From Phaeosaccion multiseriatum (Eukaryota > Protista > Ochrophyta, other classes): a stretch of 64,000 nt of DNA. The stretch lies in NCBI GenBank assembly GCA_965112735.1, contig OZ218950.1, positions 4,402,001 through 4,466,000 of the forward strand, read 5' to 3'. Position numbers and translations under genes: made by a program. A model generated the notes under the pieces. The model was not told the DNA's origin. It ran no database searches and was given only the letters and a program-made list of their open reading frames with translations. Positions 28,032 through 61,096 of this stretch are shown one piece after another (the first letter of the stretch is position 1; the number at the start of each line of letters is the position of its first letter).

Positions 28032-31000
28032 TCACAGGAAGTCGAGCACGAGTTTGTCCGTTACGGCATCGGCCACCTTGGAGCAGATGGCGTTAAAGAG
28101 AGCGTCGCTCGCCCGTGCCCCCTGCGCGATTTTCTGAAACGCTTGCGCGAGATCTCCGCCCCCAAGAGCTGTCCGCACTGAGCAGCCTCCCGCAGTGGCG
28201 AGGACTTGAAGAGCCGCGTGAGAGGCGTATGCGCCAAAGGCAATGACGTCGGTCTTCATATCCGGGTGCGCAGTCCTCATGCTCGAGATGAAGGCTGCTG
28301 CAGCCACGGAGTCGTCCGCCCCTCCATCTGACATGAAAATGATGTGGGGTAGGGCTCCAGGCGGGGTTGCTGCGACCTGCAAGTAAGCTTCGTTCATCGC
28401 GGGAGCAAACGACGTCCCACGGCCGTGCATGGACAGACTCGCGGCGCTCGCCAATACATCAATCGGCTGCTGAGCGTATACAGTCCGGGCAATTGAATCG
28501 AACTGAATCACAGTCACGAGGTCTCGTCCGCCCTGATTCTTGCTTCGCGCAGAGAGGAAGCCCTCGTACGCCCTCACGAGGTCATACCACGGGTTCCCTG
28601 ACATGGATCCACTTTCGTCCAGCACAAAGACGAAGTGAATGCCCGGTGCGCGGGTAAGAGGGCGTGCTCCACCAACGCCATCATCCACCAAAGAGATGCT
28701 CTTGAGGTAACGGCCGACGTCCTGACCCTCCTCAGAAGTGGTGGTGCCAGAAGCCGCCGCCGCCTCCTCCCGCTTCTTGAGGCTCTTCGCGACGAGCCCC
28801 TCCATCTGTCTGTCCATGGCGGCAGTCGCAAGCGGGTCCACTTGGCAGTGCATCACGAGCAGCTTCTTGGCGATGACGAGGTCGAAGGCTTTCTTGAGGT
28901 CTAGGAGTGACTCCTTGCTCTTGTCTGGATGGTCGTCACTCACGACCACCCCGGGTGCGAGTCCGCTGGTGAAGACGGTTCCATGGCATGGGTTGTCGGT
29001 AAACAGGATGATGAATCTGGCGATGCCTTTCCAGTCGTCCCACTTGGCGACTCTCTTTAGCGCCCCAGCCACGTCTTCCGCGTCGTCCCTCCCTCCGCTC
29101 GGAGATTGGATAGTCTTGAGCTGCTGAATGAACTCGTTTGCATCCGTCGTGAAGTGAGAGGAGACGTTGGCCCCACTCCCTTCGCCAGTACCCTCGGTCA
29201 CAAAATGTGTCTTCTCGTGCGTATCCCCGTAGTCCCGGAAGGCCAAGAAGGACAGACGGACTTCAAACTCTTGCTCAGGATGATGCTTGGTCACCTTGGA
29301 AGCAATTGAGTTGTCCCCTACCACAATGCTGTCCACCTGGGCCACCAGCTGGCGGTGAAGCCCCGCCATGCTTCCCGTCACGTCAATGACAAAGGCGAGG
29401 TCAATGACGATCTTGCCAGGGTCGCTGCCCGAGCAAATCATGAGCTCTCGATCTGTCCTCAGATGGTTGTGCAGCTGCTCAAAGCGAGACCAGCGCTCCT
29501 GCCCCAGCAGGTGCTCCACATCGATTTGATCTGCTCCACGCGCCACCAGGCACAGCTGCTCCCACTCCTTAAACAGGGCTCGAGAGCACGATGCCGCGTC
29601 GTCGTCCCCAGTCTGCTCTCTTCCTGCCGCCGCAGCGTCCATTTGGTCACACAAGCTCTTGAGAGCCTCGGGTATCGCGCTCGACAGGGCCGCCGCAATC
29701 CAGCGACCATAGAGCTGCTGTACGTTGGCCTGCTCCATGCCCACCGCGATACCAATCACATCAATGTCCCTACTCTGACACTCTGCCTGCGCCTGCGTGA
29801 GTCGCGCAGCACTGCTGCTGTGGCCGTCGGTCAGGACGAAGATCTTGGAAGGATGCTGCTGCCAAGATAGCAGGGACATGGCCAGCGAAACAGCCTCTGC
29901 GTCGCACGTGCGCCTCTGCTCGCGTGGGCGGAGGCGCGCAAACAAGGACAACGCCGCCCCAGGGCTCCACTCCTGTCCGGGCGCCTTGACGAGCTGCGCC
30001 TCCTTGCCGAAGAGAATCACATATGTGTCCTCAATGCCCACCTCCTGCAGCGCACCCAAGAGGACCACCAAGGCCTCGAGCGAGCTCTGCAGCAAATGAC
30101 CTTCCATCGACTGACTAATGTCCACTGCAATCGCCACGGCGTACTGACGCTGTCCGCCACAAGTCCGAGCAGAGAAAAACTTTTTGTAGGAAAAGTCTGT
30201 GCTCACGGCCTTGATGAGCCCAGGGAGGTCGAGCTGGCTGCCCTTGAAGGCGGCCTGTCTCCTCGTGAAGCGGTTGAAGGGGAAGAGAAGAGTCTCCATC
30301 ACAGCTGCGGTCTCTCCGATCACGCCTTGGAGCTTGCAGCTCAGGGTGATCCACTGCTCCATTGCCTGCTGTGCATCGGCAGGGAAGCGGCTCTCGAGCT
30401 CCACACACAAGGCATTGCAGCGACTGGGGAAGTCTTGTAGCGTGGCGCTGACCTGATCTTCGTCCTCGCCCAGCAGCGACGAAACCTGCCCGGCTCTGTC
30501 CATCTTCACTAGCGCCCGATCACGAAGGTGCTTCACTCGTTCCTCGATGCGGGCCTCCCCGCCGGGGGAGCTGACCGAGTACATGAGTGGGGGCCGTGCC
30601 ACTCCCTCTTGGAGAGCTGTCCCAATGTCCAGTGGGCTCGAGTGCAGCTCGTAGAAGCGCATGCTCCCTCCAAAGTCTCGAGCACTCCCAGAGAGGTGTT
30701 GCAGATCAGGCTCAAAGATGCTGCTGCTCTTGGTTGGTGGCCTGCCTCCGGCGCTCTTGGTTGGTGGCGCCGCGGCAGCCTTTACAGCGCCGTAGTCCTC
30801 CCGCATCACTCGCTTGAGGGATCGCGTCACCATCTGGTGCAGAACAAGCGGCAGAGCGCCCCCTTCCTCCCGCCTCGCCTTGTCCAGCAGCGTCGCCTGC
30901 GAGATGGGAAAGTAGAGCTCATTCGAGATAATCTTGAGCTTGGCATCCAGCCTCCCTGCAAACTCCCGCTCGCTGTCCTGGCGTGTGTGGAGGATGGCAA

Positions 31001-31915
31001 GCTCCACCTCGCACTGAGTCCGCAGCTCGACGAGGTCGAGCTCATTGCCGCTCATGTCCTGTCCTTTGCGGGGAGCAATCTCCTGGGAGAGGGCGTCCGT
31101 GATGACGATGGAGATGCGGCGCTGGAAGGGCTCTCGAGGGGCCACGAACAAGCCCCCCTGAGGGTTGGACCAAATCGCTTTGAGGCAGCTGCCGATGTGA
31201 GAGCTCTCGTCGTGAGAGAAGCCCGCCAGCACTCGCTCCCCTACACGCAGTGAAAAGGGCTCGTCCATATGCTTGAGGATGCGGCCTCTGTTGGCGTCCC
31301 CCAACGTGGCCACGGCGAAGCGGCACTCGAGGCGGCGAAGCACCTCCATAAGCACCGTCACCATCTCCGCCACGCTGTTACTCACTCGTGTCATGGAGCC
31401 GCTATTGTCCACAAGCACCGCCCACTCAATCTCCACGGGCTCTCCTGCTCGCTCCAGGCTGTCTTGGCTCACAATGGCACGGCAGTCCGAGAGTAAGTCC
31501 TTGACGAGCATAGCGAGGCCCTCGCTCTCCGCCAGCAGCTGGTATGTCCACTTCTCCTGCCTACCCTTGGACGCACGGAACTCAGATGGCAGCACCAGCA
31601 CGCGCGGATCATGCTGTAGCCTAATGTTCCCGGCTCTCTCAAACGTTTCGGTAATGTCCTGGTCACCCATCTTGCGCTCGATGTCCTTGGCGCCCAGCTG
31701 CAAGCTGACCTTGGCGAGCTGCATCTCTGCATACTCTTGCTCCTCAATCTCGGAAGCGTTGACAATCTTGAGGTCGCTCCTGTGAATGGGGGGGGGGCAG
31801 GATCGACACAGTCAAGGCGTCGTGCTCAGGATGGAGAGCATACAGGACATTATTGCTCACACACACGCACCCACACGCACACGCACGCACGCACATGCAC
31901 GCACGCACACGCACG

Positions 31916-31989
<74 letters not shown>

Positions 31990-34900
31990 TGGAAGGACCC
32001 TTACCGGCTGATCTTCTTGTTCTTCTTCTTTCTGGCCGGTTCGGTCGGCCTCGTGCTCGGCAGTGGGGGGTGCTGGCGCTCAGGAGGCCTCACGAGGGTC
32101 TTTGGGTTGGGAGCAAATTCGACTGTCTTTGGCGCCTCGAATGACGCATCGACAGGAGTGGACCTGGCCGGGAGCGCTCTGGGTAGCACATCATCCATGT
32201 CTAGCTGAATCTCGCCCAGTTTCACATGATTGACCTTCACCGATGTATTCGCGGCGGCGGCCTGCCTCTCCTCCCACAGGGAGCTCACCAGCTCGTTAAC
32301 ATCGTCCATATCTCCCCCCTCCTCCCCACCCCAGTCTCGCTGCCCCCCCCGCTCCTTCACCCCCCAGTTCTGCATGGCCGAGTTCTCGAAGGGGTCATCC
32401 TCATCCTCTTCTGGTGCTTGTTCAAAGGCCCGCAGCGCCTTCTGCTTGTCACTCGGATCGTCCAGCGGCACCTCAAAGTCTGCCTCCTTGTCCATTCTCT
32501 TGCCACTCGACACGTTCAGCCTCATCTCGTCGGGAATGTTGAGGGACTGGATGCTCTTCTCAAGCTTGCCCATCTCCCTCGCCAGCAGCCCCTCGGCTGT
32601 CCTGCTGCCCAGCTTCTTGAGACGCTGCTGGATCGCGTCCATCACCAGCAAATTGGACAGCCCTACCCGCACGAAGTCGCTCGTAACGCTGCGCTGCTCT
32701 TCGCCCTCGTCTTCCTGCCGCTGTCCCATCTCCCAGAAGCTAGCGTAGCCTTGTCTCCAACTCTTGCTCGACTCCGTGAGAGCAGGGATGCCTCGGCTGA
32801 GCTGCGCGCCCCCCACTGGATCGGACAAGCCTGGCGCTGAGGGAGCCTCTCCCAATGGAGTGGTGTCCGAGGCCACGAGGCAGTCCATCCTTAGTTCCAC
32901 CTTGGCATTGTCGAGCTGAAGCTTGGCACTCTCCAGAGCCCTCTTTGCCTCGTCCAGCTGCTGCTCATCACTCCTCGATGCTTGGTACGCCTGTTTGTGT
33001 ATTCGGGGACCGGGTACAGGATGGGTACATGAGTCCACCTTAACAGCAAGACGCCGTATACTGTTGGTTTGACCTCCTCCTCCTTCTTCTCCTCCTCGTC
33101 CTCCCCCGCTCCCTTATCCTCCTCCTCTTTCTCCTCCGCCTTCTCTTCCTCTTCCTCTTTCTCCTCCTCATCCTCTTCCTCCTCCTCCTCCTCCTCCTCC
33201 TCCTCCTCCTCCTCCTCCTCCTCCTCTTCCTCCTCCCCCTCCTCCCCATGCTTCCTCCCCTCACCTGAACACCGAGTCGCATACCCTCTTGCATCCCCTT
33301 GGACACCTCAAACGCGTGGTCCTGGAACTGCACCTTGGAGGACCCAATCAGAATAGCCGCAGAGTCCCCTATAGCTGCCTCAGGGGGGGCATGGCTCACA
33401 TCACCAAAGGTGGTACTTGCCATCTCACCCCTCCTCTCCCCCGGGAGTGACGCATTGGCGGCCTCTCCAGGCCCAGCGCTGCAGGGCGTCTCTCCTTCAG
33501 CCGCTCGAGCAGTGCCCTGAGAAGGACAACCGCGCTCTCCCTGCCGAGCTCCAAGGAACTCCCCCCCCCCGGCCCCTCCTGCCCGTCCAGCAGAGGTCGG
33601 TGCGATTCCACCCAGATCCTGGCCGTAACCCTGGTCCTGACTCTGGCCCTGATCCTGACCCTGACCCTGACCCTCACCCTCACCCTGCCCCTCACCCTGG
33701 CCCTTACCCTGACCCTGGCCCTGACCTTCACCCTGACCCTGACCCTGACCCTGACCCTTACCCTGACCCTGACCCTGACCGTGGTCCTGATCTTGACCCT
33801 GACCCTGACCCTGACCCTGACCCTGACCAAGCCCCTGGCCCTGACCCTGACTCTGACCCTGGGCCTCACCCTGACCCTGACCCTGGCCCTCACCCTGGCC
33901 CTGACCTTGGCCCTGACCCTGACCCTGACCCTGACCCTGACCCTGGCCCTGACCCTGACCCTGACCCTGACCCTGGCCCTGGCCCTCACCCTGACCCTGA
34001 CCAAGCCCCTCACCCTGACCCTGACCCTGACCCTGATCCTGACCCTGACCGTGGTCCTGACCTTGACCCTGACCCTGACAATGACCCTGACCCTGACCCT
34101 GACCCTGACCCTGACCCTGACCCTGACCCTGACCCTGACTCTGACCCTGGGCCTCACCCTGACCCTGACCCTGACCCTGGCCCTCACCCTGGCCCTGACC
34201 TTGGCCCTGACCCTGACCCTGACCCTGACCCTGACCCTGACCCTGACCCTGACCCTGACCGTGGCCCTGATCTTGACCCTGACCCTGACCCTGACCCTGA
34301 CCAAGCCCCTGACCCTGATCCTGACCCTGACCCTGACCAAGCCCCTGACCCTGACCCTGACCCTGACTCTGACCCTGGCCCTCACCCTGGCCCTGACCCT
34401 GACCGTGGCCCTGATCTTGACCCTGACCCTGACCCTGACCCTGACCCTGACCCTGACCCTGACCCTGACCCTGACCCTGACCCTGACCCTGACCAAGCCC
34501 CTGACCCTGGCCCTGATCCTGATCCTGACCCTGACCTTGACCCTGGCCCTGACCCTGACCCTGACCCTGACCCTGGCCCTCACCCTGGCCCTGACTCTGA
34601 CTCTGACCCTGGGCCTCACCCTGGCCTTGACGTTCATCTGGTGAGGTAGAGCATCTCCCCGTGGCAACCCCCTGATCTGCTGACTCCTTTTCCCAAGAGG
34701 CTCTGCAGAGAAGGTCATGGTCCTCCAGACGCATCAAGCCTGCCACCACGAGGAAGGAGCCGACGCTCCTCGCCAGGGCGTCGTGGCCTTGCGAGGCTTC
34801 ACCTCTCGACTGCAGCACCAGAGAGATGCCATGGGAGATGCTGCGCAACCCGGCGACAGCGATGCGACGATCAGAGGTTAGATTGTCGTCCCCACTCAAG

Positions 34901-37900
34901 CCGTCCAGCATCATGGAGAGACCGATGATGTGATTGAGACCCCGGGCCTGTGCTCCATCCCCATCCGGAGACGGGGTTGCTGTGGTAGCTGCTAGCTCCC
35001 CGATTTCTGCGATGAAGGCGGTGGAGCCTGCGTGAAGGCTCTCGAGCTTCTTCCCGACGGGCAGTCCATACTGGAACCACGCCGCCAGACGAGTCGGAGT
35101 GGAGGCCAGGATCCCAGAGGAGCAGTCCCGAACAAAGTCTGCCAGGCCCTGGAGCTGCTCGCGCTGGAGGCCTTGACCAGAAGGCAGCGAGGAAGCGACG
35201 CACAGATAGGCCTCGAGGGTAGCTTCCACACTTTGGCCGAGTGCTACCGCCGGTTGGTGGTGTCCATGCTCGACGAGGAGGAGGAAGGCCTGCGCTACGT
35301 CCACCGCGGGGTGCTCCTTCTCCTGCGAGGACAGCCACTTCAAGCCTTGCTGCAGGAGAGCCTGCACTTGCAGGGGGCTGACGTCCGAGGGCAGATACGC
35401 AAGCTTCTTCATGGTGTCGCTCTTCAGCAGCTCCACAGTGCAGCGCACCCGCCGTTGGAGAGCTCCGCTGGACTTGCGTGGGCTGCACTCCGTCAGCACA
35501 TCAATCAAAGGCTTCATCACCGCCTCCAGCGTGCTGTTGCTCAAAGTACTCCCACTACGGGCGACAGCGTACAGATGCCGAAGTGCCTCTGCCTTGCGCT
35601 TAGTCACCTCTATCTCCTCGTCGGTCATGAAGACTCCCGCGCCGACAAACTCCACCACAGCGGACAGAGTCCCATCAAAGTCAAAGGCAGACCCACCGAC
35701 CAAGGCTTCGCACAGCTGCGTATGATTCGCTGCGAATGTGACGATCGCCTTCTCCGGGGGCTTGATCGTCTGCTGCTGGGATGGGTCCAGCGCCTGTGGT
35801 GGGTGGAGCGCCCTCGTCAGCTCGGCAAAGCAGTCCGAGGTCCGCAGCGCCGCGAGCACCTCCTCTAACTCCGCTGACGTTTTGCCTCCGCTGAGAAGAA
35901 GCAGCAGATCGACCACACGCTCTGGTGATAGCTCGGCCTTCACCCCCTTCTCGTAAGCATCATCGGCAGCCCAAGCCTCGCGCAGGATGCCCCATGTGGG
36001 CCGCAGACCTGCCGCCTTGAGAAAGTGACGCACAGGGCGGCGATGGTACCGTACAGCGCACGAAGAGGCAGTCGCTGCAGTCTCACGCATCCCCTCCACC
36101 AGGTCTACAAACCAGGGGCGGCGGGAAGAGGAGGGGGGATATTGCTCAAGGACAGATAAGAGCGCATCCAGCACGATGTGCCCCTCCTGCTGCCTCTCCT
36201 TTCTCCACTCGGCGATGACTTGGCGATGGGGGTTCCACTTGCCGAAGAGAACAGTCCTCAGCACACTCCGCCACTCCTCCGAGTCCACAGCGGGCTGCTG
36301 AAGGGCACGGAGGAGACTGCACGAGGGCGGATCCAGACTGGCCAACATGTCCTCTTCGTTGAGGAGCTCCAGCCAAGCAGCAGGCCCCGACGCACAGGAA
36401 GACGCGCTCGGCGAAAGGGGAAGCTGAAGCTGCCCATAGGCAGCCAACAGAGGCCCCGCACTTACAGCCGCCTTGGACTCTGGACTGATCACTTCCAGCG
36501 ACAACTCCAGGGGGGCTCTTCCTCCGCCCCCGTCAGCCGCAATGCCAGCAAAGGTCTGCCAGCAGTGCTGAGACGGGTGTCCTGTACAGTATCAACAATC
36601 AAACAAATACAAAAGTCATACGGTAGTCGTTCGGATACAATAGCGGATCCCGCCGGCCATGAAATGGCAGGTCCTTTAGTCAAGTCGACCTCGTCCCCCA
36701 GTCCTGGCACTCAAACTCGACGCTGCTAAAGGAACATTACTCAGCCCGGCTACACACGCAAAACTTACCTCCCATATGCTTCCAGCGCTTCACTGCCTTC
36801 GCAGTGACTGGGAGCTGCAGCAGACTCGAGCAGGCTTGGTTCACCTCTGTTGGAGTCACCGCAACACTGCACAGAACCTCGCCGATCATCTCGTCGAGCA
36901 CAGTGGGCTTCTCCCCGTTGGCGAGTCGCTCCTCGACGATGGTACTCAGAGCCTCCCTCGCCGCTGTCGTTGACGAAGACTCCACGAGGCCTCTACGTGC
37001 CGCCTCCAGCACACTCTCACCGCACGCTGCGGCGTCCTCATCACTCAGTGACGGCAGGCCGGTGACAAGCCGCACCACCGAGGGCTGCTGGCCCAGCTGC
37101 AGGAGCTTAGATGCGCTGTGCCCCCCCGCCTCCACAACAGGAGCACTCCCGCCTTTCAGCCCATCAAAGTCCATCGCTGCGGAAGCATCCTCGCCGTGGA
37201 GAATACACCCAACCAGGCATGCTGCTGCAATTACTCTCTCTTCGTCTGGCCGAGATGTGCGAAGGAGTTCGATGGCAGCCAAAGGGTGCTGCCCCAGGGC
37301 ACTGATCGGCTGTAGTGGTGACGAGGGCGCGGCAGGAGGAGAGAGCGTGACCAGTAGAGACTTGCTGCCACCCTCTCGCACGGCGCCATCGGGGCCAACG
37401 CTACATTCTCCGGGGACCGCGAAGGTGATGATCGCATGGTGCATGCCCACGGGAGCAGCAGCAGTTGCGCCAGCAGCAGATGCAGGAGTCGCGCCGTCCA
37501 CGGTGGCCCGCAGCTTCCAGAAGTGGTGATCCCGGCCTTCCTTCCCTCTCTTGGGAGCCAGGTCAAGGAAGTCCTCACTAGACTCTTTCTCTGTGCACTT
37601 CTCGTCCTTGTAGCGCGTAAGGCTCAGAGCTGCGCCGGGTGTCGGGAGACCGCTTGCCCCAGAGAGAAGATGTGGGTTGCTGTGGGCGTCCAGACGGTAG
37701 CGTAGTGAAGCACCGCCTTCGTTGGTGCTGGCGAACATCGCCTCGTACGTATGCTCCTCTCCATGGACGGGAGCGAGACTGACGGCTGTAACTTCCTTGT
37801 GCTCCTTCTTCTTCTTCCTCTTCCCCGTGCTGGCGTCAGAGCACGCCACGAAAGCGAGGCGAGAGCCTTTCAGGCGGATATTGTATTCGCACAGGAGGGT

Positions 37901-40900
37901 CGGCCGCCGCTGGCTGTTGACTTGGAAAAAGAAGCTGTCCTTACCCGCCGCCAGACAACTCTTCCTCACGAGCACACTCTTCCTCACGAGCACCTCTGTG
38001 CGCGCAGTATGGCCAGGCTGCACCACCACTTCTGAAATGGCGCTGTCTGCAAACTCCACGTCTGATGAGCCCTGAAGCGAGACAATAGTCTCAATGTCTC
38101 CCATGCTCTTCAACTCCACCGGGACTCGCACAGGCTCCAGCGAGCCGCTGGTCTTAGCTTGGCGTAGGTCCACCTCCACAACGGAAGTAGCCTTTGCCGA
38201 CATGTAAACCCCTCCGCTTCGCACAGTCAGGATAATGTGCTCGTCCCGCGTGCCCCCAATCTTCGCGCCAACCTTGAAGTCTTTGGAGCCAGAGCTGTCT
38301 ACAGATTTGCTCAGGTACTCGAAGCGAATGCGCCGCGACGCTCCAGGAGGCACAGCACCACTCGCAGGATGGATTGAAATCCTCCCTCGCTCTCCTCCCC
38401 CTCCTCCTCCTCCACCTCCTTCTCCTCCTCCTCCACCTCCTCCTCTTCTAGGTCCAGAGGCCGAAGAGGTAGGCACCGACAGCTCAAAGGGCATCGGCAC
38501 TGCGGAGTGGTTGACCAGCCGCAGATGGCGACTGCATGTCTCCTCCCTCTCGCCGTCAGGGATCTCCACGTCGGGCATCTGCAGGTCCATCACAATGCTT
38601 GACGCACCGACGGGCAGCAGAAGCTCTCCTTGCCCCCCACTGCCCCCCCCATTGGCGGACGATATCTCCAGTTGAACGTGGCCGGCGATGCCTGCGAACC
38701 TGTCTCTGCCGTCTTCGGTTGTAAAGTGAAGGGGCACTCTACGCTTCTGACCTGGCTGGACTGAAACGCTGCCGCCTCCCTTCAGACGCAGATTCCTCTC
38801 CTGACCTCGCAGGGCTAGCCACTTCATTGAAGCATGGAGGGCAGACGATCCTTCCAGCCCTTCGTGGAGGAGCTCCAGCTCCCGTTGTGGAAAGTGCCCC
38901 CGCCTCAAAAGGTTGGCATGAAGTCTGATGACTCCCATGTGAAGGCCATGGGGGAAAACACCGCCCTCTGACTGCGCCGAAGCCGCTGCTGACGCCACAT
39001 CCACCTTGAGAGCTTTTGCCGCTGGTCGGCATGGAATGGCGAGGAGCTGCCTCCCCTCCAGTGGAGCGATGGTCTCACCCAGCTCGCTGACGTTATCTCC
39101 CTCCTCCTCCTCTTCAATCAAGGCGTAGCAGCTCTCTAGCAGAGACCCACGGACCGGGACACGCAGCACATCCTTGCTGCTGCCGAATGCGATGACGACG
39201 TGGCTGGCGATGACGCGCGGCATATTCCCGGAGTCAGCAGTGTCTACGAGCAGGCTCAGCGGCAGTCTCGAGTGCGGCTTGAGGTAGAGGGAGAAGCTGT
39301 CTCGCTCCTCTGCGGACGTTGATGACACAAAGCTGACAGGCGCCGCTCCCGATGCTGCATCCTCCTGGATCTTGGCCTTGACCCACACGCCAATGTGCCC
39401 ATCGTTGACAAGGAGAAGGGCTTGGCGCCGCTCCTCACCTAGCGGGACTCCAATCAGACAGTGCCCAAAGTTAATGGCGCACGGTTCCACCCGCGCAGAG
39501 ATGGGTGCGATGATGCACCGGACGAGAACGTCGGTGCACGCCGCCACTTCGTTGCCGAATGCCTCGTCTCGCAGCTCCAGCTTCACATGGAAGGAGTGCT
39601 CACCAGGTGTCAAGGCCGTACTGAGGCTGAAGGACACACTGGGTGACTCGAAGGGTCCTACTCGGAAGGCTGACGCTGGGCTAAGCTGCAGTGGGAAGGT
39701 TGCCTTCGTGAGCCCGTGGGCGGCCGCTGCGCTCTCCCCGGCCGCAACTGCTAGCACGGGGACTGCCTGAAGCTTCAGCCTCCTGTCCATCTCATTGACG
39801 AGCTGCAGGCTCCTCGTCTCTGTCCACGGTGCATCTCGCTGCTGGACGGTTCCGAGGTCCATCACCACTACGGGCGGCTGCAGCGATGGCTCACCCCCCG
39901 CCCCTGCTGCGCTGATCTTGACGACAAAGGAAGAGAGCGCCATGTCTGCTCCGCTGAAGGGATTCGCCAGAGTAAGCGCGTCGCCTCGCTCCTGCAAGTC
40001 CTTCTCCTGCTTGGCACGCTGCCTCGACGCATCCAGGCAGGCGAAGCGATGGTTGCGCCTTCTGATCAGAACATGCACCGCGCGTAAGATCCTATCCAGC
40101 TCCCTCTGCTTCGCAGCGATATGCATCTTCTCCACGAAACGCACTCTCGCCCCCCCCTTCCAAGCGTCGAGCACCCTCCTGGCGGACGATTCGTGCTGCT
40201 GAACCGTGCGGCGTTCTCTCATCTGCGTCAAGTCCAAGGCGCTCGAGCAGCAGATTTGGACTCCGAGGCTCAGGAAAGCCGTCACCGCGACATGGGAGCC
40301 AATTACTTCCAAGATCAAGCGACGATTGACCCGAAGCAGTCGCATAGCCTGTTTGAGCTCCTCCCCTGCTTCGACGGTGATGATGGTGCTAGTCGTGTCG
40401 TCCAGGAAGGCCTCTGGACACTCGACAGATCTCAGTGCGTGCCCCTCTTTCCACTCCTGAACCATCCGCTTTCGAATTTCTCTCATATCTTGCGTAAGAG
40501 TCAGCATGTCGCTCTCAATCTTGAAGCAAAGCTCTCCTCCGTGCTTCCCTCGAGCGGCCTCGTCGTCCAAGTTGCTACAGTCAGCACCATCGCTCTCGAC
40601 GATGGCCTCCAGCTCCCCCAAGTCTGTGGAGGCCGTCACCTCCTCCATCTTGGCCCTGAGGCGCGTGAGATTGCTCCAAAGGACACTCCCTTCGAGTGCC
40701 TGCCGAGCCCGCGTGCTGTCTTCCCTCATCTTCTCTTCCATCTGCCCGCTGTATAGGGCTGGGTCTTCCACGTGTTCTTTCGGGCGATAGGATGGCGCCG
40801 GCCTTACTCTCTGAGAGATGCGCAGTATCTGCTGGAGGCGATCCTCCGCGACCCGGCGGGGTGATTGAGTAGTACAACTAAAGTCATCCGCGGCATTCAC

Positions 40901-43900
40901 ATCAGGAGCAGGCTTGGGCTCGTACTCCATATACTCGCGCTCCTCCGCTTGCGCGACGAAGTAGGGGCTGTTACTATGGGGCTGCGATACTCGTTCGGCG
41001 TTCCAGTAGCATCCCTCCCATCCGTAGCGCTTTAGGACGCGTATCGTGCACTTCGTTTGCGCTTTGTCGGCACTCGCGAGCCCGAATATGCTCTTGGTGG
41101 AGTCCCACCATCCGCCCCATCTTTTCTTGCCCTCGACTGCTATGGCAAAATCGATCAACGCCGGAGGCTCGGTCAGGCAAGCATACGGGACAAAGACTCG
41201 CAGGCTATGTGGATGAGTGACCTCGACTCTGGTTCGGTGAGTGTCACGACTCAGAGCTTCGGTCGGCTGCTTGTCGATCCTGCCACGGTCTTGAAGCGTG
41301 ATGTGTACAGCCACGCCCGCGGGCCTCGCCTCAAAGTACTTGCCAATGACGGGCCTTGCCTCTGTCCGACATGACTGGAGGAGGTCTCGAAGCATCTTGT
41401 TGACGAAGCGCTTGTCCTGGGCAGCGTCGATCCTTCTGCGCCTCTCTTCCTCCTCGTCGCTGGCTGCTGACTCCTCCTCCCCGACAGCCGGTGCTGCTCC
41501 TCCGCCCCGCACACGTGCTGCTCCTCCGCCCTGCACACGCTCCTCCTCGTTCTGAGCAGCGTCCATCTCTTCCTCCTCGCCGCTGGCTGCTGACTCCTCC
41601 TCCCCGACAGCCGGTGCTGTTCCTTCGACCTGCACATGCTCCTCCTTGTTCTGAACAGCGTCCATCTCTTCCTCCTCGTCGCTGGCTGCTGACTCCTCCT
41701 CCCCGACTGCCGGTGCTGCTCCTTCGACCTGCACACGCTCCTCCTTGTTCTGAACAGCGTCCATCTCTTCCTCCTCGTCGCTGGCTGCTGACTCCTCCTC
41801 CCCGACTGCCGGTGCTGTTCCTTCGACCTGCACATGCTCCTCCTTGTTCTGAACAGCGTCCATCTCTTCCTCCTCGTCGCTGGCTGCTGACTCCTCCTCC
41901 CCGACTGCCGGTGCTGCTCCTTCGACCTGCACACGCTCCTCCTTGTTCTCAGCAGCGTCCGTCTTTTCCTCCTCGTCGCTGGCTGCTGCGTCCGCTTCTT
42001 CTGCTTGTTGCGGTGTGGCAGAGGACTTTCTCTTCACGAGACCGGAATCTGCCATTTGGAAGAGGGCAGCCACACCTTGCTCCACGAGGGCGGCAACGGT
42101 GCCTCGTTCACACTCCCACTCGGACAGTTTGTCCCTGTATCTTTGCTCGTCTTCTCTGGAGCGCTTGAGGTATTCGCCGTACTTCCGCTCCACTCCTTGA
42201 ATCTTCTTCCTTGTCTGTTCGTCCCTCGCTGCGATTCGCTTCTCCAAGACATCCTTCAAGGAGCACAGGACCCTCTCCGCCGCACGCCCCAAGTCCTCCG
42301 CGCAGCCTGCAATCAACATCGAGGGCCTCTGCGGCAAGGCGCTGGAGCTACTCGCGGCGTGCTTCCAAAATGATTGAACGATGCGCTGTGCAAAGGCGTC
42401 CTCTGCATCAAGCACCTTCTGCAGAAGAGGGAAGCCGTCCGTGTCCATCTGCTGGGCATCGCTAAGCGTGGAGAAGAGCGCCGAGACGGACTCGCGGCAG
42501 GCAGCGTAGTGCTCCTCCAGCATGGGGCAGCACACATCGACGCGGAACGACGCCAGCATGAGGAGGTCGAGGACGTCGCTTACGTCTTGCACCCCGAGGC
42601 ACAGCAAGTCCGCCATTGTCTGCGGGACAGAGAGATGATGTATCATCTCCAAGCCCTGTCCTCCTCCTCCCAAGACGGCTTGCTGCCCTCGGATGGCCTT
42701 TACGAGTGTAGCGTAGGGCGACCCCCCTCCTGCGCTTCTGGTGTTGACGAGATCCGCCACGAGCACATGCCGCAGGTCGAGGCTTGGAGAGGGCGCTGCC
42801 TCCCCCCCTCCCTCCTCTGCGGGCAGCGGCACCTTTTGCAGCACATCTTCTTCTTCGAGTGGTCCCAAACGAGCTCTCGTCTCCTCAAACGCAGCTCGAA
42901 TCGCTCTGCTCTGCATGTGAAGCAGCTCCTGCGTAAGCGCTTGCACCACTTCCTCGACATGCTGCGCCAGCTCATCCTGAGACTCTTGCCCTCCTGTCAT
43001 TTCCGTCATCACATCGCCCAAGCTCTGCACCGCTTGGCCTTCCAGCAGCAAACACAGATCCTTTACGCCCTCCATCCTATCATTCACCGCACTGAAATGC
43101 TCAAGCGCGCTCCTCTTGTCTCTGATCACAGCGAAGTGCTCTCTGTCCTCGCCACCTCCGGTGTCCTTGCCTGTCAACCGGACCACCAGGAGGGAGCCCA
43201 GGCAGTGTGAGAGCTGTGCAAGCTGCTCCAGCGCCTTGGATCCCTTGATTCTCGGCGTGAAGAGCCGCGCTTCGCACTTTGCGCCTCCGAAGATGGGCAC
43301 TAGGGTCTGCTTGACCAAGAGATGGGCCACGAAGGATGGGCCAAGGAGGGTTTCATCGTCCAGTAACGAAACGGCCTGCTGGAGGGAGTCGATGACCTCG
43401 AAAGGCGAGCTGGCGACTCCGTATGCAGCGTGGAAGAACGAGCCAAGGAGGGACTGCGAGACAGACCCAAACTGCGCGTAGAGGCGGTCGCTCTCCTCCA
43501 GTAGCTCGTGCGCCTCGAGGCTCAGCAAGAAGGTGTCACCTCGTCTCCTCAGCCAGGAGCCGAAGGCCTCAATGTCCCTGCTCAGGCTGGCTGCACACAG
43601 CTGCTTGGCCTGCACACTGGACAGCAGAGTGTACATGCTGTTCGCAGCGTACGTGCTGATGCACCGCGACTGCTTCCGCACTGACCACTGCGCTCGACCA
43701 TCAAGCTCCACGCCGTGCTGACTCCTCCTCCCTGATGCTGCTGCTCCATCCGCCACAGCAGCAGCCACGTCTTCGAGCTTGACCACCGCTGTCAACACGG
43801 CAGAGGCCTTATCGTGAAGCAGCTCCATGCTGGCAGTGTCCTCCCCGCGCACATGAGCAAACAGAGCGCCCACGTCCTGCATGAGGTCCGGGACGATGGC

Positions 43901-45048
43901 CAAGGCCTGCTCGTGGAATGAGCGCATGGCGGGCCCCAGTGAGTAAGCGGAGCGCACAAAGCCGAGCATGGCCGAGCTGGCGTTGCGCAGAGTCGCGAGG
44001 GCCACCTTCATCACGTCGAGGAGGTGGAACAGCTTCCTACCACAGGGCCCGCTGCGCTTCCTCGCAGCAGAGGGCTCCAAGTCCGCCTCGAGGAGCTGCG
44101 CGGCCTCCTCCACTAGCTCCAGCGCTTCACGGGCTCGCTCGGATGAGTCTCGCAGTGTAGCCTCGTCAAGCCTGGACAGGTCCTCGAGACGCTCAAACTC
44201 GCTGTACATGGCTGCGCTCAGCTCTTCTGGGCCGTCTTCCCAAGCATCGCCACCCCCATCTGCACCGACAGTGCAGAAAGCTCTGAGAAGGAGGCCCTGC
44301 AGCGTCTTGGCCGTTGCCGCCGGCTCTTTCCGCTGACGGTCACCGTCCTCCGACGACTTCTTTCGCTTCCCCTTGGCCTTCTTCTTCAGCTCCTGCACAG
44401 ATTTCCTGAGAGTCTTGACTTCTTCTGCAATTTCTTCGCTTCCTGGACCTTCGATGCAACCTTTCAAGGCATTGATGCGCTCTTCCTTTTCCTCGATCTC
44501 TTTCTCGAGCGACTTCTTGCTGACCCCAGGCGATCCTCCTCCCTTAACAAATCCCTCCAGCTCCTGGACCATCGTCTGCGTGAAGGCAGTGTGGCAGCCG
44601 CGGAGCATGCAGAGAGCGAGGGGGCACTGAAGGGGTATCCAATCGCCCACGGAGCCGACGAGGCCCGAGGCGTACACCCTCATGTCGTTGTCCGCCTCTT
44701 GCCTCGAGTAGACCAGGGAGTTGAGCACCTTGGTCAGGAACAACATCAGATCCTTGAGGTAGGGCACCATTGCCTGTCTCGACTCCTCATCCACAAGGCT
44801 GTGGTCCGTGGAGTCTACACCGAGCTCACTTGCTTGGAAAAGAGACTCCCAGGGAGGCAGTGTCGGCATGTCGCTCGCTGCAGAGGTTCCCAGCAAGAGA
44901 CGGCTGGAGAGGATGGACTCCGCTCGCTGCTCGAGCTTCATGGCGTGGCGCACCAGCTCGACGCAATTGGGGGCGGCAAGGAGGACCACGTCCGACGGCC
45001 TGAGGCTGACCAGCCCCGAAGATCGAAGGCACTCCCCACCGGGGATGC

Positions 45049-45088
<40 letters not shown>

Positions 45089-48000
45089 ACCGCTGCTGTG
45101 GGCCACGCACGGCCCACGGCCTAACACTCCCACCACTTCTATCAGGCGCTGCCGCCTCCGCTGCAGATCTTGCATGTGGACGAAGGAGAGGTGCAGCGGC
45201 GTGCGGCGCACGAGGTGTTGGTTGCGGTCCATGAAGTTCGGTGGGCCTTGCGGAGGGGAGCCTCCTACTTCTTGGCGGATGGAGAAGGGCAAAGCCACCT
45301 CCTCGGGCTGTGCGAGGAGCCTCTGCACGTGCCCATCAAGGAGAGTGGAGGTGCGCTTCGCCACGATTCCCTGCAGCAAGGCCGCTTCCGCCTGCTCCAG
45401 GCCCGTTGTCGACATGTCGGTCAGTGAGCAGCCCTCGCACTGCACCACGCGGTCAAGCTCGGGGATGCAGAGGAAGTTCTGCAAGTCCCGTGCCCTTCTG
45501 TCCTCCTGGCCCTTCATCTGATGTCCATTCCTGAGCCTGTCCAGCAGGAATAGCATCTGACTCACTGCCGACCGCTCCATGCGGATGCGCACTAGTCTGG
45601 ACGAGGTGTCATCGAGGGCCGCTGCGGCGGGCATGCCCTGTCCCGTGGGGTCGCCTGACGGGTTTGGATGTGAAGGGGAGAGAGAGGGGGAGGATAAATG
45701 GGTTTGCGACGAACGAGGGAAAGGCCCACGGGGGTTGACTTTACATACCTACGAAGACTCGAAGCTTGTGCCGCTGCTCTGCTGCGTCTTCTTCCACCAC
45801 GTCCACTCCCTCCTGTGGCACATTCTTCCACAGCTGCTCTTCGCACAGCTTGGGGAAGTCAGCCACCCGCTTCTTGAGCGCTCGAAGGCGAGGAGGCAGT
45901 CGCATGAAGAGGGGATCTGAGTCCTCCGATGCCTGTCGGAACAAGGCCAGCTCGCGCTCTCGGTCCGCGATCCAGCATCTCTCCTCCTTCAGCTCCTTGT
46001 CCACCTGGTGCTTGCTGGGGACCAAGACCTCGGGATCGGAGAGCTTGGAGCGCTTGTCCTGGAGCTTGCCGAGTCTCTTCCGCGTTGTCATGGCCAAGAA
46101 AAAGCAGCCCGAGTCATGAGCGTTCTTGAGCAGTACCTCCATGAGCTTCATGACACTCTGGAGCCCATCCTTCATCTCTGCTCGCTCCCTCGCCGCAGCC
46201 TGCTGCGCCTTCTCTGCTGCCTCTGCCGATGTCTCGTCGCCTCTGCTCGTTGGAGCGTGGGCAATGGCTGAGTGCAGATTGAGCCTGTACTTCTCGATTG
46301 TCGCCAGCGGCACCTCTACTTTCACAAGCAGCTCGTGCATCCTCAACGCCATACCCTCCAAGCTGCTCCGCAGACAATCCTTCTCGAGCAGCACCTCTCC
46401 ATTGTGGGTCTCCAACATCGAGAGCAGCTGCTCCACTACCTCTTCCCACTCCGCTGCGACATGCCCTGAGGCAGCCTCGTACATGCGGGACACTTCCCTC
46501 TCCTCGCCCCTCAGCTGGACGAGCCTCTCTGGAATGAAGGTGGCGATGAAGAGAAGAACATTCTCGAGGCTGGCAAGGAGATGAGCTGCCGCCTGCGCAC
46601 TTGCCATCCTCGTCGTGTCCACAGCAGTGCCTTCCTGCCACTTGTCGAGGACTGCCTTGACGTGGCTGAACAGCCTCGGCTCTCTCTCCACACAGCGAAG
46701 CAGGTGCACCCTGGCGGAGTTGCTTTCGGGGATACCTCTGCGGATGGCATCCTCGCTGTCCGAGAGGCGTTTGTGAGGGTCGACCTGGCTCAGCAACAAA
46801 TGCAGCACCTGTACATGTTGCTCCGTCTCCTCACTGAAAGGCCAGGCTGGTGACGAGACTATGAACAACTTGAGTTCCGCCAGTGTGGTGATGAGCCGCG
46901 TGGAGAAGTGGCTCCCTCCCAACTCCCCTTCCGTGGTCCCCTCGATGGTCCGATACAGTCGTACTCGAACCTCATTGAGCTTCTCCACAATACTTATTTG
47001 AGACGGGCAGAAGGGCTGGACACACAGCGGCAGAGGCGCGCCGGGAGAGGGCGGCGACAAACTCGAGAGTCCTGCCATCGTCGCAGCGATAGCGCCTTGT
47101 AGCCCTGAGATGGTGCAATCTTCCATCAGCTCCACCACCTTGCTGCGCTCCTGCTCTCGGTCTCGGACTTGGAGGCGGAGCCGCGCGAGGTCCTCGATTG
47201 CGTCCATGGCCGTGAGCTGCCGTCCACATCGCTCTTCAGCGTCCCTTGGGAGCAGGCGGTAGACACTCATGCTCCCGTCTTCACTAAGATGCAAGACCAG
47301 GGCTGTGACAGAGAAATCGTCCTTCCCGTCGAACAAGAAGATCACATGTGGCGCTCCGGGCTGCATGTGCTCTAGCAGAGAAGAGGAGACAGGCATGAAG
47401 GTGCGATGCAGTCTTGCCGACGAGCCCTCCTCCTTCAGGATGGAACTGGTGCCGAACGAACACCACAGTGCCACGTCCAACAGAGGGCACCTGAGGTCAT
47501 GCTCTGTCAGAACCTCCAGAGCCTCTACAAAGTTTGATGGTCGCATGCGGTTCACGGCTCCTCCACTCTGAAGTGCGTCCGTCCTGTCCAAGCCGTCCAT
47601 GCGACTCCAGTCTGCCAGTAGAGACGCGACTTTGCCTGCCGCCACGGCAGTGATGACGTGCTCGATCGTTCTCCACTCGGGGGACTCCAGCTGCTCTTGC
47701 ACCCCCTCCAGACCGCCAGACCATGCTGCTTCCATAGCAATCTCCCTCCTCTCCTCCAGCTCGCTTCCGTGCTCCCTCAGCGAAGCCACTTCTGCCTTTA
47801 GCTCCTGCTCCTGGATCTCAAGTTCTTTCTCCAAATTCTTGTCAGCCTTCTGTGGCCATTTACCCAACAAGCTCCAGCTCGTCTCCTTGCGGCACTCCGC
47901 GAGCTCCTTCTGCTTCTCACCCAGCCTGGCCTCCGCTCTAGTGGTTTCCCTTGCGTTTGTAGCCAAGTCCTCCTCCACCTGGCTCAGACTCTCCAGAGCT

Positions 48001-60000: not shown

Positions 60001-61096
60001 TGCATGTGTGCTCGAGCCACGTGTCGGGGCTCAGGAGGAGAGACAGGAGCCTCTGTCGTTCCGGGCACGTCGGAGCCGCTTGAAGGAAGCGGGGTGTGAA
60101 AGGCTTCCGAGACCAAGCGCCGTCACTCCATCCCAGCCAGTGAGCCTTGGCGAGCTCCGGGTGAGCGGCCTCGACGTCACGGCCTAGGAGAAGGGGCAGT
60201 GCGCTTAGTGACACATCGCTCTTGACGGGATTGACACCCTGTGCCGGGTAAAAGCCTTTAGAACGGACGGGGTGGGGGGGCAGTGGGGAAGGGAAGAGGT
60301 GGTGGATGGACAGGCCCGTGAGTGAGAGGTTGGAAGTAGACCATGCCAGGCGAACAAAATACACAAAACAAGCAGTAAGGGGATGTGTACACTTACCCTT
60401 GCTGGGAGCTGCGGGGTAGAGAATGAGGCTCCATAGCATGAACAGAGGGGAGAGACTGAACGGGCCCAATCCTTGTCGTCGCAGCAGTGGCAAGGATTGC
60501 AGCTGGTCCTGGTGCCTGAGTCGCTCCAGAAGGGCACTGATGAGGCGGTAGGCATCGTCCACCGCCACCGCAGAGAGGGGGGGCGTGGACTCATCCTGGC
60601 CACTACGCGGCGGAGAGAGCTTCAGCTTAAAGTCTTGGCTGACTGTGCAGCTGTATAGCGCCTTGATAAGGTGCGGCAACAAGAGGATCACGCTCTCCTG
60701 AGCAGCCTGAAGCCCTTCTGCTGAGACACATCGGCACCTCGCCACCAGCCGCCAAGCCTGCCAGACGACCCCACCAGCCTCCACGCTCAGCCACGGGAAA
60801 GCCTCCATACTCTCCCCTCGACAAGCCCTGAAGGAGCGACCATAGAGCCCCTCCTCATTCGGCAGCAGGATAAGCTGGTTCAGGTCCTGGATTTCCGTCT
60901 CGCTCAGACTGTCTGCAGTCACCCGTGAAAGCTCGGCGGCGAAAGTACGGAGAGCTACCGTCGCTGCCTCCTCTTCCTGCTGTGTAGCAGCAAGTCTTCC
61001 TGGTTGCTCCTGCTGCAGTCCTTTTGCAAGAGCTTTCAATCTCTTTCGGCAAGCCTTGTCCCACACATAGAGCTGGGAAGAGAACGAGGATGCCAT
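28032..61096 (-). CDS. Giant midasin/Rea1-like protein (~10,472 aa): 6 AAA+ modules, long linker, ASH/PapD-like Ig repeats, Gly-Gln repeat, 4 vWA domains
   Basis: Exons 61096-60397, 60255-57917, 57783-56384, 56239-54821, 54665-52883, 52766-52689, 52591-52323, 52194-45749, 45654-36769, 36581-33265, 33038-32005, 31779-28032. Total 31,419 nt; all 11 introns are GT-AG and phase-compatible. Splicing restores split motifs ([16 protein letters not shown]; [22 protein letters not shown]; [23 protein letters not shown]; RSRFTE/IVVPSY). Walker A motifs [53 protein letters not shown] motifs DNSGS, DISQS, DVTGS, DESGS. Confidence 0.85.
31919..31986. repeat. (CA)n microsatellite in the last intron of the giant gene
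   Basis: Pure CA run within intron 32004-31780. Confidence 0.95.
33612..34630 (-). repeat. ~1-kb hexamer array (GGTCAG)n, read as (Gly-Gln)n in exon 10 of the giant gene
   Basis: (CCCTGA)n on the + strand. Variant units keep the 6-bp period and give GE, GL, DQ, SQ, DH with no stop in the gene frame. Confidence 0.95.
41450..41990 (-). repeat. Coding 99-bp (33-aa) tandem repeat, ~5.5 copies, acidic
   Basis: [17 protein letters not shown](R/H)VQVEG(A/T)APAVGEEES. The anchor CTGGCTGC recurs at 41583, 41682, 41781, 41880, 41979. Confidence 0.95.

What the first reader, a model, noticed from the sequence alone, without database searches (positions are those of the whole stretch)
28032..31435. Four dissimilar vWA domains in tandem, all retaining MIDAS-type residues
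vWA1 (~31435-30820): [17 protein letters not shown]. vWA2 (~30145-29650): [22 protein letters not shown], preceded by [37 protein letters not shown], which parallels the midasin/NorD/CbbO pre-MIDAS segment (as recalled, LILEPT..GDY.TGKRLNM..I..I...KIWLRRT). vWA3 (~29405-28780): [35 protein letters not shown], the type seen in VwkA-like alpha-kinases. vWA4 (~28640-28120): [24 protein letters not shown], TerY-like. They look like separately acquired subfamilies rather than a recent duplication, implying several client specificities or decoys around the ancestral MIDAS (vWA2).
Basis: partly seen in the sequence, partly recalled or inferred. Interest (0 to 1): 0.85.

Follow-up and report, generated by a model that had tools for sequence, protein, structure and literature searches.

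The report
Four-vWA tail of giant midasin paralog
The finding is real: it is the last exon of a roughly 10,800-residue, midasin-like motor gene of a eukaryote, ending in four different metal-site (MIDAS) vWA domains, and it belongs to a widespread, uncharacterised sister family of the ribosome-assembly motor midasin, not to midasin itself.

Summary
Confirmed. Window 28032-31779(-) is the last exon of a multi-exon eukaryotic gene (about 28032-61123, about 10,800 codons). The gene has six dynein-type AAA modules, a huge linker, a short poly-Glu stretch and four vWA domains.

All four domains keep the MIDAS residues, which are invariant in 35 of 35 relatives per domain. They are not detectably similar to each other by BLASTP.

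- vWA2, with its pre-MIDAS segment, is the counterpart of the midasin MIDAS. This rests on a profile match to solved midasins, hhalign and a tree (96/90).
- vWA1 is also MIDAS/NorD-like but lies outside that clade.
- vWA3 is a VWA_4-type, integrin-beta-I-like domain.
- vWA4 is a generic extracellular-type vWA. It is not specifically TerY-like.
- The vWA3-vWA4 pair is a portable module. It also ends giant SecA-DEAD/helicase proteins.

The gene is not canonical MDN1. An AAA tree splits a "giant" family from canonical midasins at 100/100. That family includes green algae, Chlorarachnion, Hondaea and bdelloid rotifers. Bryopsis has three giants plus a canonical MDN1. Relatives carry one, two, three or four vWA domains.

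The likely function is a multivalent, metal-dependent ligand-gripping head pulled by the AAA ring. The clients are unknown. I found no published description of the family beyond a passing note in rotifers. The window is not human.

The parts
28032..61123 (-). Approximate span of one multi-exon gene (about 10,800 codons) encoding a giant midasin-like AAA+ protein. The exact 5' end and some introns are not resolved.
   Evidence: A chain of long stop-free blocks lies on the minus strand. GT(A/G)AG donors sit exactly at the ends of the open blocks at 57917, 56384, 54821, 52883, 45749, 36769 and 32005. Relatives carry the AAA ring and the vWA tail in one protein.
49640..58100 (-). AAA ring region: six AAA_5 (dynein-related) modules with a midasin AAA lid. 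Coordinates are approximate.
   Evidence: Pfam finds AAA_5 in several stretches and AAA_lid_7. PDB phmmer hits midasin 6or5_A at E=2.8e-113. Walker A motifs lie at nt 57994, 56205, 55170 and 51500.
33300..49640 (-). Giant linker (more than 5,000 codons) with no detectable similarity to the midasin linker. It holds a 99-bp x4.8 tandem repeat (41515-41988) and a hexanucleotide repeat of about 1 kb (33610-34631) that reads (Gly-Gln)n in the open frame.
   Evidence: No Pfam or PDB match for the 3003-codon block. It is not conserved at BLASTP 1e-5 with relatives. Repeats.
33073..33245 (-). Short poly-Glu (D/E-rich) stretch upstream of the vWA tail. It reads as Glu only in a frame different from the long open block, so small introns must flank it.
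31780..32004 (-). Last intron (225 nt, GTAAGG...CACAG), containing a (CA)n microsatellite.
28032..31779 (-). Last exon, encoding the whole four-vWA tail. The stop codon is at 28032-28034.
30795..31436 (-). vWA1: a MIDAS/NorD-like vWA domain (DNSGS 31395-31409; Ser at the Thr position, 31197-31211; ITDA 31092-31103).
   Evidence: Profile against PDB: midasin MIDAS E=4.2e-12, human MDN1 MIDAS 8ql1 E=9e-12. AlphaFold pLDDT 88.1. Foldseek best hit 8ql1_A, then NorD. hhalign to canonical MIDAS P=98. No Pfam hit for the single sequence.
30141..30389 (-). Pre-MIDAS N-terminal extension of vWA2 (conserved FPxNKFTRR...LPGLIKAV...YKK...GGKRxY).
   Evidence: It is the best conserved part of alignment A3. 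It aligns with the segment preceding the MIDAS in S. pombe and S. cerevisiae midasin and in C. thermophilum 6qt8.
29580..30149 (-). vWA2: the counterpart of the midasin MIDAS domain (DISQS 30108-30122; Thr in RRTCD 29901-29915; LTDG 29823-29834).
   Evidence: Pfam VWA and VWA_2 above cut-off. Further support.
28755..29411 (-). vWA3: a VWA_4-type, integrin-beta-I-like vWA domain (DVTGS 29370-29384; GGRDDAED 29073-29096; FTDNPCHG 28980-29003).
28035..28643 (-). vWA4: a classical vWA domain with a perfect MIDAS (DESGS 28605-28619; GRGTS 28410-28424; MSDG 28323-28334). It ends the protein.
   Evidence: Pfam VWA_3, VWA and VWA_2 above cut-off. Profile against PDB: CLCA1 VWA E=3.8e-12, then PTMP1, collagen VI and ITIH. 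Residue conservation.

Best explanation
The region encodes the C-terminal, ligand-binding tail of a giant paralogue of midasin.

**Shown**
- One eukaryotic gene encodes, in order, six dynein-type AAA modules, a very long linker, a short acidic stretch and four vWA domains.
- Each vWA domain has an intact, family-wide invariant metal-ion-dependent adhesion site (MIDAS).
- vWA2, with its N-terminal extension, is homologous to the single MIDAS domain of midasin.
- vWA1 is a second MIDAS/NorD-like domain.
- vWA3 (integrin-beta-I-like, VWA_4 type) and vWA4 (classical vWA) form a two-domain module. The same module is also attached to unrelated SecA-DEAD/helicase giants.

**Inferred, by analogy with Mdn1/Rea1 and with MoxR-vWA pairs such as NorQ-NorD**
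- Each MIDAS grips an acidic side chain of a partner protein through its bound metal.
- The AAA ring uses ATP to pull on the tail and so extract or remodel the bound partner.
- With up to four such sites the tail is multivalent. It either holds several clients or several points on one large assembly.
- The clients are unknown. They need not be the ribosome-assembly factors used by canonical midasin.
For: **Gene anatomy.**

**Four vWA folds with MIDAS.**

**vWA2 is MIDAS-type.**
- Profile against solved midasins, E=1.5e-16 including the pre-MIDAS segment.
- hhalign P=99.0, E=7.5e-18.
- Best of the four HMMs on 81/81 canonical midasin tails.
- The clade vWA2 + canonical MIDAS has 96/90 support.

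**The architecture is conserved.**
- 164 representative proteins match the tail at E<=1e-30.
- Many of them are 4,000-7,400 aa long, with the tail at their C-terminus.
- Named examples are Bryopsis, Chlorarachnion and Mesostigma. Apatococcus also carries all four domains.

**Paralogy with MDN1.**
- There is a score gap in the AAA comparisons.
- The AAA tree separates 26 giants from 17 canonical midasins at 100/100, with Chloroplastida and Metazoa on both sides.
- Bryopsis sp. KO-2023 has the giants BSKO_10123, BSKO_10106 and BSKO_02574 and also a canonical 5766-aa MDN1, BSKO_01177, with a single MIDAS.

**The vWA3-vWA4 module occurs on another chassis.**
Against: - No functional data exist for any member.
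- The gene model is inferred from open frames and splice consensus only, without transcripts.
- The linker is unlike the midasin linker and the acidic stretch is much shorter. Force transmission may therefore differ from Mdn1.
- Only four of the six AAA modules show a canonical Walker A.
- Relatives with one, two or three vWA domains show that four sites are not required for the basic function.
- Some short architectures may be truncated gene models.
- One rotifer copy is tolerated in truncated form (PMC7943196).
Confidence: 0.65

Rival explanations
1. It is the organism's true midasin (MDN1/Rea1) orthologue that has simply grown a longer linker and extra vWA domains. It would still act on Rsa4/Ytm1-type UBL proteins in 60S ribosome assembly.
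For: - The AAA region hits solved midasins at E=1e-113 and carries the midasin AAA lid.
- vWA2 with its extension is MIDAS-type.
- Some databases auto-name relatives 'Midasin'.
- I could not inspect the rest of this organism's genome.
Against: - The AAA tree puts the window inside a family separated from canonical midasins at 100/100 by a long branch.
- Window against canonical AAA gives 122-211 bits. Window against family members gives 234-655 bits.
- Bryopsis holds both kinds. Animals (rotifers) and green algae appear on both sides of the tree.
- Pfam families seen in canonical midasins (PF17865, PF21108) were not found in the window's exons.
- The family is multi-copy in Bryopsis and rotifers.
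Confidence: 0.07
2. The extra vWA domains are not client binders but internal regulatory parts. Acidic residues of neighbouring linkers or of the AAA ring would occupy their metal sites as 'internal ligands', as between integrin alpha-I and beta-I domains. The chain of vWA domains would then relay or gate the state of the one true client site.
For: - vWA3 is integrin-beta-I-like and keeps the GGxDxxED motif, which aligns with the beta-integrin GNxDxPE segment.
- Acid-rich linkers lie between the domains.
- In Mdn1 the MIDAS docks on the ring (background knowledge; PMC8837202 describes its load-dependent binding).
Against: - The vWA3-vWA4 module works on a completely different chassis (SecA-DEAD/helicase giants). 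That fits an autonomous binding module better than a part tuned to this tail.
- Relatives lacking vWA3 and/or vWA4 exist.
- No internal ligand was identified.
Confidence: 0.2
3. The ORF 28032-31724 is a separate gene starting at its ATG. It would be a stand-alone multi-vWA protein partnering the upstream AAA gene in trans, like NorD with NorQ.
For: - There is an ATG at 31724 and a 1230-aa ORF.
- MoxR-type ATPases usually have separate vWA partners (PMC7159879, PMC13036017).
Against: - The frame is open upstream of the ATG to 31811.
- A strong acceptor at 31780 pairs with a strong donor at 32005 at the exact end of the previous open block.
- Relatives have ring and tail in one polypeptide, including a 6830-aa uninterrupted ORF (P0020) and the 7295-aa Apatococcus protein.
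Confidence: 0.05

Closest known systems
Midasin (MDN1 / Rea1), the AAA+ mechanoenzyme of pre-60S ribosome maturation
   Same: - Six AAA_5 modules in one chain with a midasin-type lid.
- A long linker, then an acidic stretch, then a C-terminal MIDAS-bearing vWA preceded by the same conserved N-terminal extension.
- vWA2 clusters with canonical MIDAS domains.
   Different: - About twice the length (about 10,800 against about 4,900-5,900 aa).
- The linker is not recognisably homologous, and the acidic region is very short.
- Four vWA domains instead of one.
- A separate clade in the AAA tree, co-existing with a canonical MDN1 in Bryopsis.
- Multi-copy in some genomes.
- Clients are unknown.
Prokaryotic MoxR-vWA pairs (NorQ-NorD, CbbQ-CbbO, RavA-ViaA)
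   Same: - An AAA_5/MoxR-clade ATPase works with a MIDAS-bearing vWA adaptor.
- NorQ and NorD are among the solved-structure matches of the window's AAA modules and of vWA1.
   Different: - Those are separate small proteins forming homo-hexamers, with one vWA.
- Here all parts are fused in one giant eukaryotic polypeptide with four vWA domains.
Integrin beta-subunit I-like domain (for vWA3) and Pfam VWA_4 (PF25106)
   Same: - It is the best sequence-profile and fold match of vWA3.
- The DxTGS and GGxDxxE(D) motifs align with the beta-integrin metal-site segments.
   Different: - vWA3 is an intracellular tail domain of an ATPase, with 15-20% identity and TM about 0.5.
- No hybrid or PSI domains.
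- The window copy is just below the VWA_4 cut-off (24.7 against 27 bits).
Giant SecA-DEAD/helicase (+DnaJ) proteins ending in the same vWA3-vWA4 pair (P0088, P0101, P0104, P0077)
   Same: The C-terminal two-domain module is the same, at about 30-38% identity to the window's vWA3-vWA4.
   Different: - The motor is a completely different ATPase: SF2/SecA-like instead of a hexa-AAA ring.
- They have no vWA1 or vWA2.

Membership tests
vWA fold with MIDAS (von Willebrand factor type A superfamily) | Significant match to vWA sequence models | tested here: met
   - vWA2 and vWA4 are above the Pfam cut-offs.
- vWA3: 26/35 relatives match VWA_4, and the window copy scores 24.7 against 27 bits.
- vWA1: no Pfam hit, but its family profile hits midasin MIDAS and integrin I domains at E=4e-12 to 1e-5.
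vWA fold with MIDAS (von Willebrand factor type A superfamily) | Alpha/beta Rossmann-like fold | tested here: met
   Tested for the two doubtful domains only.
- vWA1 model: pLDDT 88.1, best fold match MDN1 MIDAS 8ql1.
- vWA3 model: pLDDT 86.9, best fold matches integrin beta I domains.
- vWA2 and vWA4 were not modelled.
vWA fold with MIDAS (von Willebrand factor type A superfamily) | DxSxS ... T ... D metal-site residues | tested here: met
   Present in all four window domains. The window's vWA1 has Ser at the Thr position, and vWA3 has DxTxS. The residues are invariant or T/S in 35/35 aligned relatives per domain. Metal binding itself was not tested.
Canonical midasin (MDN1/Rea1) orthologue group | Six AAA_5 modules in one polypeptide with a midasin AAA lid | tested here: met
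   AAA_5 stretches lie across four exon blocks, and AAA_lid_7 is present. Midasin is the best PDB match, E=2.8e-113.
Canonical midasin (MDN1/Rea1) orthologue group | Groups with MDN1 orthologues in a gene tree | tested here: not met
   The window falls in the giant family, separated from 17 canonical midasins at 100/100. Bit scores are bimodal.
Canonical midasin (MDN1/Rea1) orthologue group | Single C-terminal MIDAS domain after a long D/E-rich region; total about 4,900-5,900 aa | tested here: not met
   There are four vWA domains, an acidic stretch of about 65 residues and about 10,800 codons. Canonical midasins show one MIDAS only.
Canonical midasin (MDN1/Rea1) orthologue group | MIDAS domain with the conserved N-terminal extension | tested here: met
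   vWA2 plus its pre-MIDAS segment aligns to midasin 4426-4644 (S. pombe) and 4563-4783 (S. cerevisiae).
Canonical midasin (MDN1/Rea1) orthologue group | Binds UBL domains of Rsa4/Nle1 and Ytm1/WDR12 and releases them from pre-60S particles | not testable with these tools
   This needs binding assays or genetics.
Pfam VWA_4 (PF25106), considered for vWA3 | Score at or above the gathering cut-off (27 bits) | tested here: inconclusive
   The window copy scores 24.7 bits, matching only the first 30 profile positions. 26 of 35 aligned relatives match, the best at 7.2e-16.
   PF10138 scores 15.8 bits against a cut-off of 29.4 (E=0.017), while the generic VWA, VWA_2 and VWA_3 models pass. NCBIfam gives only a weak sortase-target hit. 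The nearest solved structures are CLCA1, PTMP1, collagen VI and ITIH.
   No VwkA sequence was available from the tools. The one search aimed at this came back blank for technical reasons.

The most novel reading that the evidence does not exclude
The giant family would be a distinct, ancient class of eukaryotic mechanoenzyme that uses a modular, multi-MIDAS 'hand'.

- The vWA3-vWA4 pair would be a portable adaptor. It would couple quite different giant motors (a hexa-AAA ring here, a SecA-DEAD/helicase elsewhere) to one common, still unknown cellular target.
- The variable number of vWA domains and the lineage-specific copy expansions (bdelloid rotifers, Bryopsis) would reflect an adaptive role, for instance surveillance or quality control, rather than a housekeeping role.
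Probability: 0.3. Interest if true: 0.8.

Novelty: new variant of a known kind. Interest (0 to 1): 0.62.

Why it matters
Midasin is treated as a single-copy, single-MIDAS machine dedicated to ribosome assembly. This locus shows something different.

- Many eukaryotes (green algae, rhizarians, stramenopiles, bdelloid rotifers) carry a second, even larger midasin-like motor. Its tail holds up to four conserved metal-site domains.
- These proteins are currently auto-named 'Midasin', 'dynein heavy chain' or 'hypothetical'. That can mislead orthology calls.
- The domain map gives a direct experimental handle. There are four separable MIDAS sites to mutate and use as baits.
- A shared vWA3-vWA4 module links two unrelated giant ATPase families to a possibly common target.

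Tried and rejected
- **Single-sequence Pfam and NCBIfam scans of vWA1.** They found nothing. Only a family profile and a fold prediction revealed the domain.
- **The search for homologous proteins with the vWA3 part of a vWA3-vWA4 query.** 5,599 word candidates but no scored hit. Known relatives of suitable length exist, so I treat this as a limit of the word index and length window, not as absence.
- **Scan of viral contigs with the vWA2 alignment.** No relative found.
- **The look-up of encoding contigs.** For P0013 it gave an uninformative metagenome contig.
- **Literature searches** for a midasin paralogue or midasin-like multi-vWA protein. Nothing found beyond a passing remark on a 7,479-aa rotifer gene of unknown function.
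- **A break in the gene.** I considered that the in-frame stop at 56380-56382 breaks the gene. It lies in a GTGAGA donor, so it is intronic.
- **The poly-Arg reading of 33073-33245.** I rejected it in favour of poly-Glu in another frame.
- **A recent four-fold duplication.** Rejected.
- **Placement of vWA1.** The domain tree has no outgroup vWA families. It cannot say where vWA1, vWA3 and vWA4 arose. vWA1 is unresolved at the hub of the tree.
Full report
**What is in the window**

The window is eukaryotic, not human. It has about 60% G+C and long open blocks separated by short GT..AG introns, some carrying (CA)n runs.

The ORF named in the finding (28032..31724, minus strand, 1230 aa) is open up to 31811. 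A strong acceptor (CACAG|G, exon from 31779) precedes it. That acceptor pairs with a strong donor (CCG|GTAAGG) exactly at the end of the previous open block at 32005.

The same pattern repeats upstream. Long stop-free blocks each end at a GT(A/G)AG donor, at 57917, 56384, 54821, 52883, 45749 and 36769. The finding is therefore the last exon of one gene spanning about 28032-61123, roughly 10,800 codons. No transcript evidence was available, so the exact model is approximate.

**The rest of the gene**

- The upstream exons carry AAA_5 (dynein-related) modules and the midasin AAA lid.
- One 2,208-codon block matches solved midasins at E=2.8e-113.
- Four canonical Walker A motifs are present.
- More than 5,000 codons follow with no Pfam or PDB match and no BLASTP-level conservation with relatives.
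- This stretch includes a 99-bp tandem repeat and about 1 kb of hexanucleotide repeat.
- A short poly-Glu stretch (33073-33245) sits just upstream of the tail, in a different frame from the open block.

**Checking the observation**

| Domain | Sequence-model evidence | Structure evidence |
|---|---|---|
| vWA1 | No Pfam hit. A profile of 35 relatives hits S. pombe Mdn1 MIDAS (4501-4667) at E=4.2e-12 and chain 8ql1_A at 9e-12. | pLDDT 88.1. Best Foldseek match 8ql1 (titled human MDN1-MIDAS/NLE1-UBL complex), then NorD and integrin alpha-I domains. |
| vWA2 | Passes Pfam cut-offs. | Not modelled. |
| vWA3 | Window copy 24.7 bits on VWA_4 against a cut-off of 27. 26 of 35 aligned relatives match VWA_4. 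| pLDDT 86.9. Fold and profile both match integrin beta-subunit I domains best. |
| vWA4 | Passes Pfam cut-offs. | Not modelled. |

The PDB sequence table labels 8ql1_A 'NDE1'. The Foldseek library gives the title above.

Pairwise BLASTP between the four domains finds nothing significant. In alignments of 35 sequences per domain the MIDAS positions are invariant, or T/S at the Thr position.

**How the four domains relate**

Profile-profile comparison:

| Pair | Probability | E-value / columns |
|---|---|---|
| vWA2 - canonical MIDAS | 99.0 | 7.5e-18, 249 columns including the pre-MIDAS extension |
| vWA1 - canonical MIDAS | 98.0 | 3e-13, 185 columns, core only |
| vWA1 - vWA2 | 97.9 | - |
| vWA3 - vWA2 | 23 | - |
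| vWA3 - vWA4 | 39 | - |
| vWA3 - canonical MIDAS | 0.8 | - |
| vWA4 - canonical MIDAS | 28 | - |

- HMMs of the four domains were run on 84 canonical midasins. In 81 of them they hit one C-terminal domain, and the vWA2 model always scored best.
- A tree of domain cores (62 rows, 191 columns) puts vWA2 and canonical MIDAS on one side of a branch (96/90).
- In that tree vWA3 and vWA4 sit on long, fully supported branches. vWA1 is unresolved at the hub.
- The nearest solved relatives of vWA4 are CLCA1, PTMP1, collagen VI and ITIH vWA domains. The TerF-type model is far below its cut-off.

So vWA2 is the MIDAS counterpart and the domains are not recent duplicates. vWA1 is nonetheless a second MIDAS/NorD-like domain, not an unrelated type.

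**The family**

An exhaustive HMMER search with the tail found 1,059 representative proteins at E<=1e-3, of which 164 are at E<=1e-30. A local domain map shows the tail at the C-terminus of proteins up to 7,408 aa. Named examples are Bryopsis, Chlorarachnion and Mesostigma.

Architectures seen:
- vWA1-2-3-4, vWA1-2-3 and vWA1-2.
- vWA1 only, in rotifer giants.
- vWA2-3-4, in P0179.

Some of the short forms may be truncated gene models.

The pair vWA3-vWA4 also ends proteins of 1,150-3,450 aa. Their other domains are SecA_DEAD, SecA P-loop or Helicase_C, and in one case DnaJ. It is therefore a portable two-domain module.

**Not midasin itself**

- A search with the AAA region of the Bryopsis member shows a score gap. 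Giants score at least 514 bits. They include three Bryopsis genes, many bdelloid rotifer genes, Mesostigma, Apatococcus and Hondaea. Canonical midasins score at most 431 bits.
- The window's AAA5-6 region gives 234-655 bits with giants and 122-211 bits with canonical midasins.
- An IQ-TREE analysis (43 rows, 661 columns) separates 26 giants, including the window, from 17 canonical midasins at 100/100 across a long branch. Green algae and animals are on both sides.
- In that tree the window groups with two metagenome sequences and Hondaea fermentalgiana, a labyrinthulomycete, at 100/97. This hints at a stramenopile origin but is only an inference.
- A search from the canonical Chloropicon midasin retrieved BSKO_01177 of Bryopsis sp. 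KO-2023 (5,766 aa, with PF17865 and PF21108). It has one C-terminal MIDAS and a canonical-range AAA score. That genome therefore holds both kinds of gene.

**Mechanism**

Shown: the architecture, the homology and the conservation of four metal sites.

Inferred from Mdn1/Rea1 and MoxR-vWA systems (PMC8837202, PMC7159879, PMC13036017): each MIDAS binds an acidic residue of a partner through the metal, and the AAA ring pulls on the tail to extract or remodel what is bound.

Invariant metal sites in all four domains argue against degenerate decoys. The autonomy of vWA3-vWA4 on another chassis argues that it binds something external. An internal-ligand, integrin-like relay between domains remains possible. 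The clients are unknown, and Rsa4/Ytm1 are not implied.

**Literature**

Searches found no description of a multi-vWA midasin paralogue. [quoted passage not shown]

**Verdict**

- This is a new variant of a known kind: a midasin-like mechanoenzyme family with a modular multi-MIDAS tail.

Noticed in passing
P0088, P0101, P0104, P0077 (proteins): The same vWA3-vWA4 pair ends giant proteins whose other domains are SecA_DEAD, SecA P-loop or Helicase_C, and in P0088 DnaJ. This is an unrelated ATPase chassis sharing the tail module.
   Followed up: partly
window 33610-34631: About 1 kb of hexanucleotide repeat (ACCCTG on the plus strand, 170 copies). In the open minus-strand frame it reads about 330 residues of Gly-Gln dipeptides. 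Other frames are open too. It is unclear whether it is coding or intronic.
   Followed up: no
window 41515-41988: A 99-bp tandem repeat, 4.8 copies at 95% identity, lies inside the 3,003-codon linker exon. That gives a 33-residue protein repeat.
   Followed up: no
window 33073-33245: The GAG/GGA repeat reads poly-Arg in the long open block but poly-Glu in another frame. The acidic stretch is only about 65 residues, far shorter than the D/E-rich region of canonical midasin. Small flanking introns are needed to include it.
   Followed up: partly
P0165, P0171, P0172, P0181 (rotifer and ENA proteins): Bdelloid-type giants of about 7,750-7,975 aa end about 25-95 residues after a single vWA1-type domain. 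So vWA1, not vWA2, is the domain retained in the one-vWA members of the family.
   Followed up: partly
P0005, P0159 (Bryopsis sp. KO-2023): Two 93%-identical giant paralogues (BSKO_10123 and BSKO_10106) lie on the same 5.68-Mb contig, which suggests a recent local duplication. A third copy (BSKO_02574) lies on another contig.
   Followed up: no
L001:16933-26093: On the metagenome contig that carries the relative P0013, the next gene downstream is another giant (9,225 residues called). It has no Pfam hit on record.
   Followed up: no
window 973-2007, 2694-5930, 63011-63871 (all minus strand): Other ORFs in the window carry a Sel1 repeat, a Laminin_G_3/concanavalin-like domain and a partial SufBD core. 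Most other long ORFs have no Pfam match.
   Followed up: no
PDB chain 8ql1_A: The PDB sequence table names this chain 'NDE1'. The structure library titles the entry 'human MDN1-MIDAS/NLE1-UBL complex'. The chain that matches vWA1 and vWA2 is the MDN1 MIDAS.
   Followed up: yes
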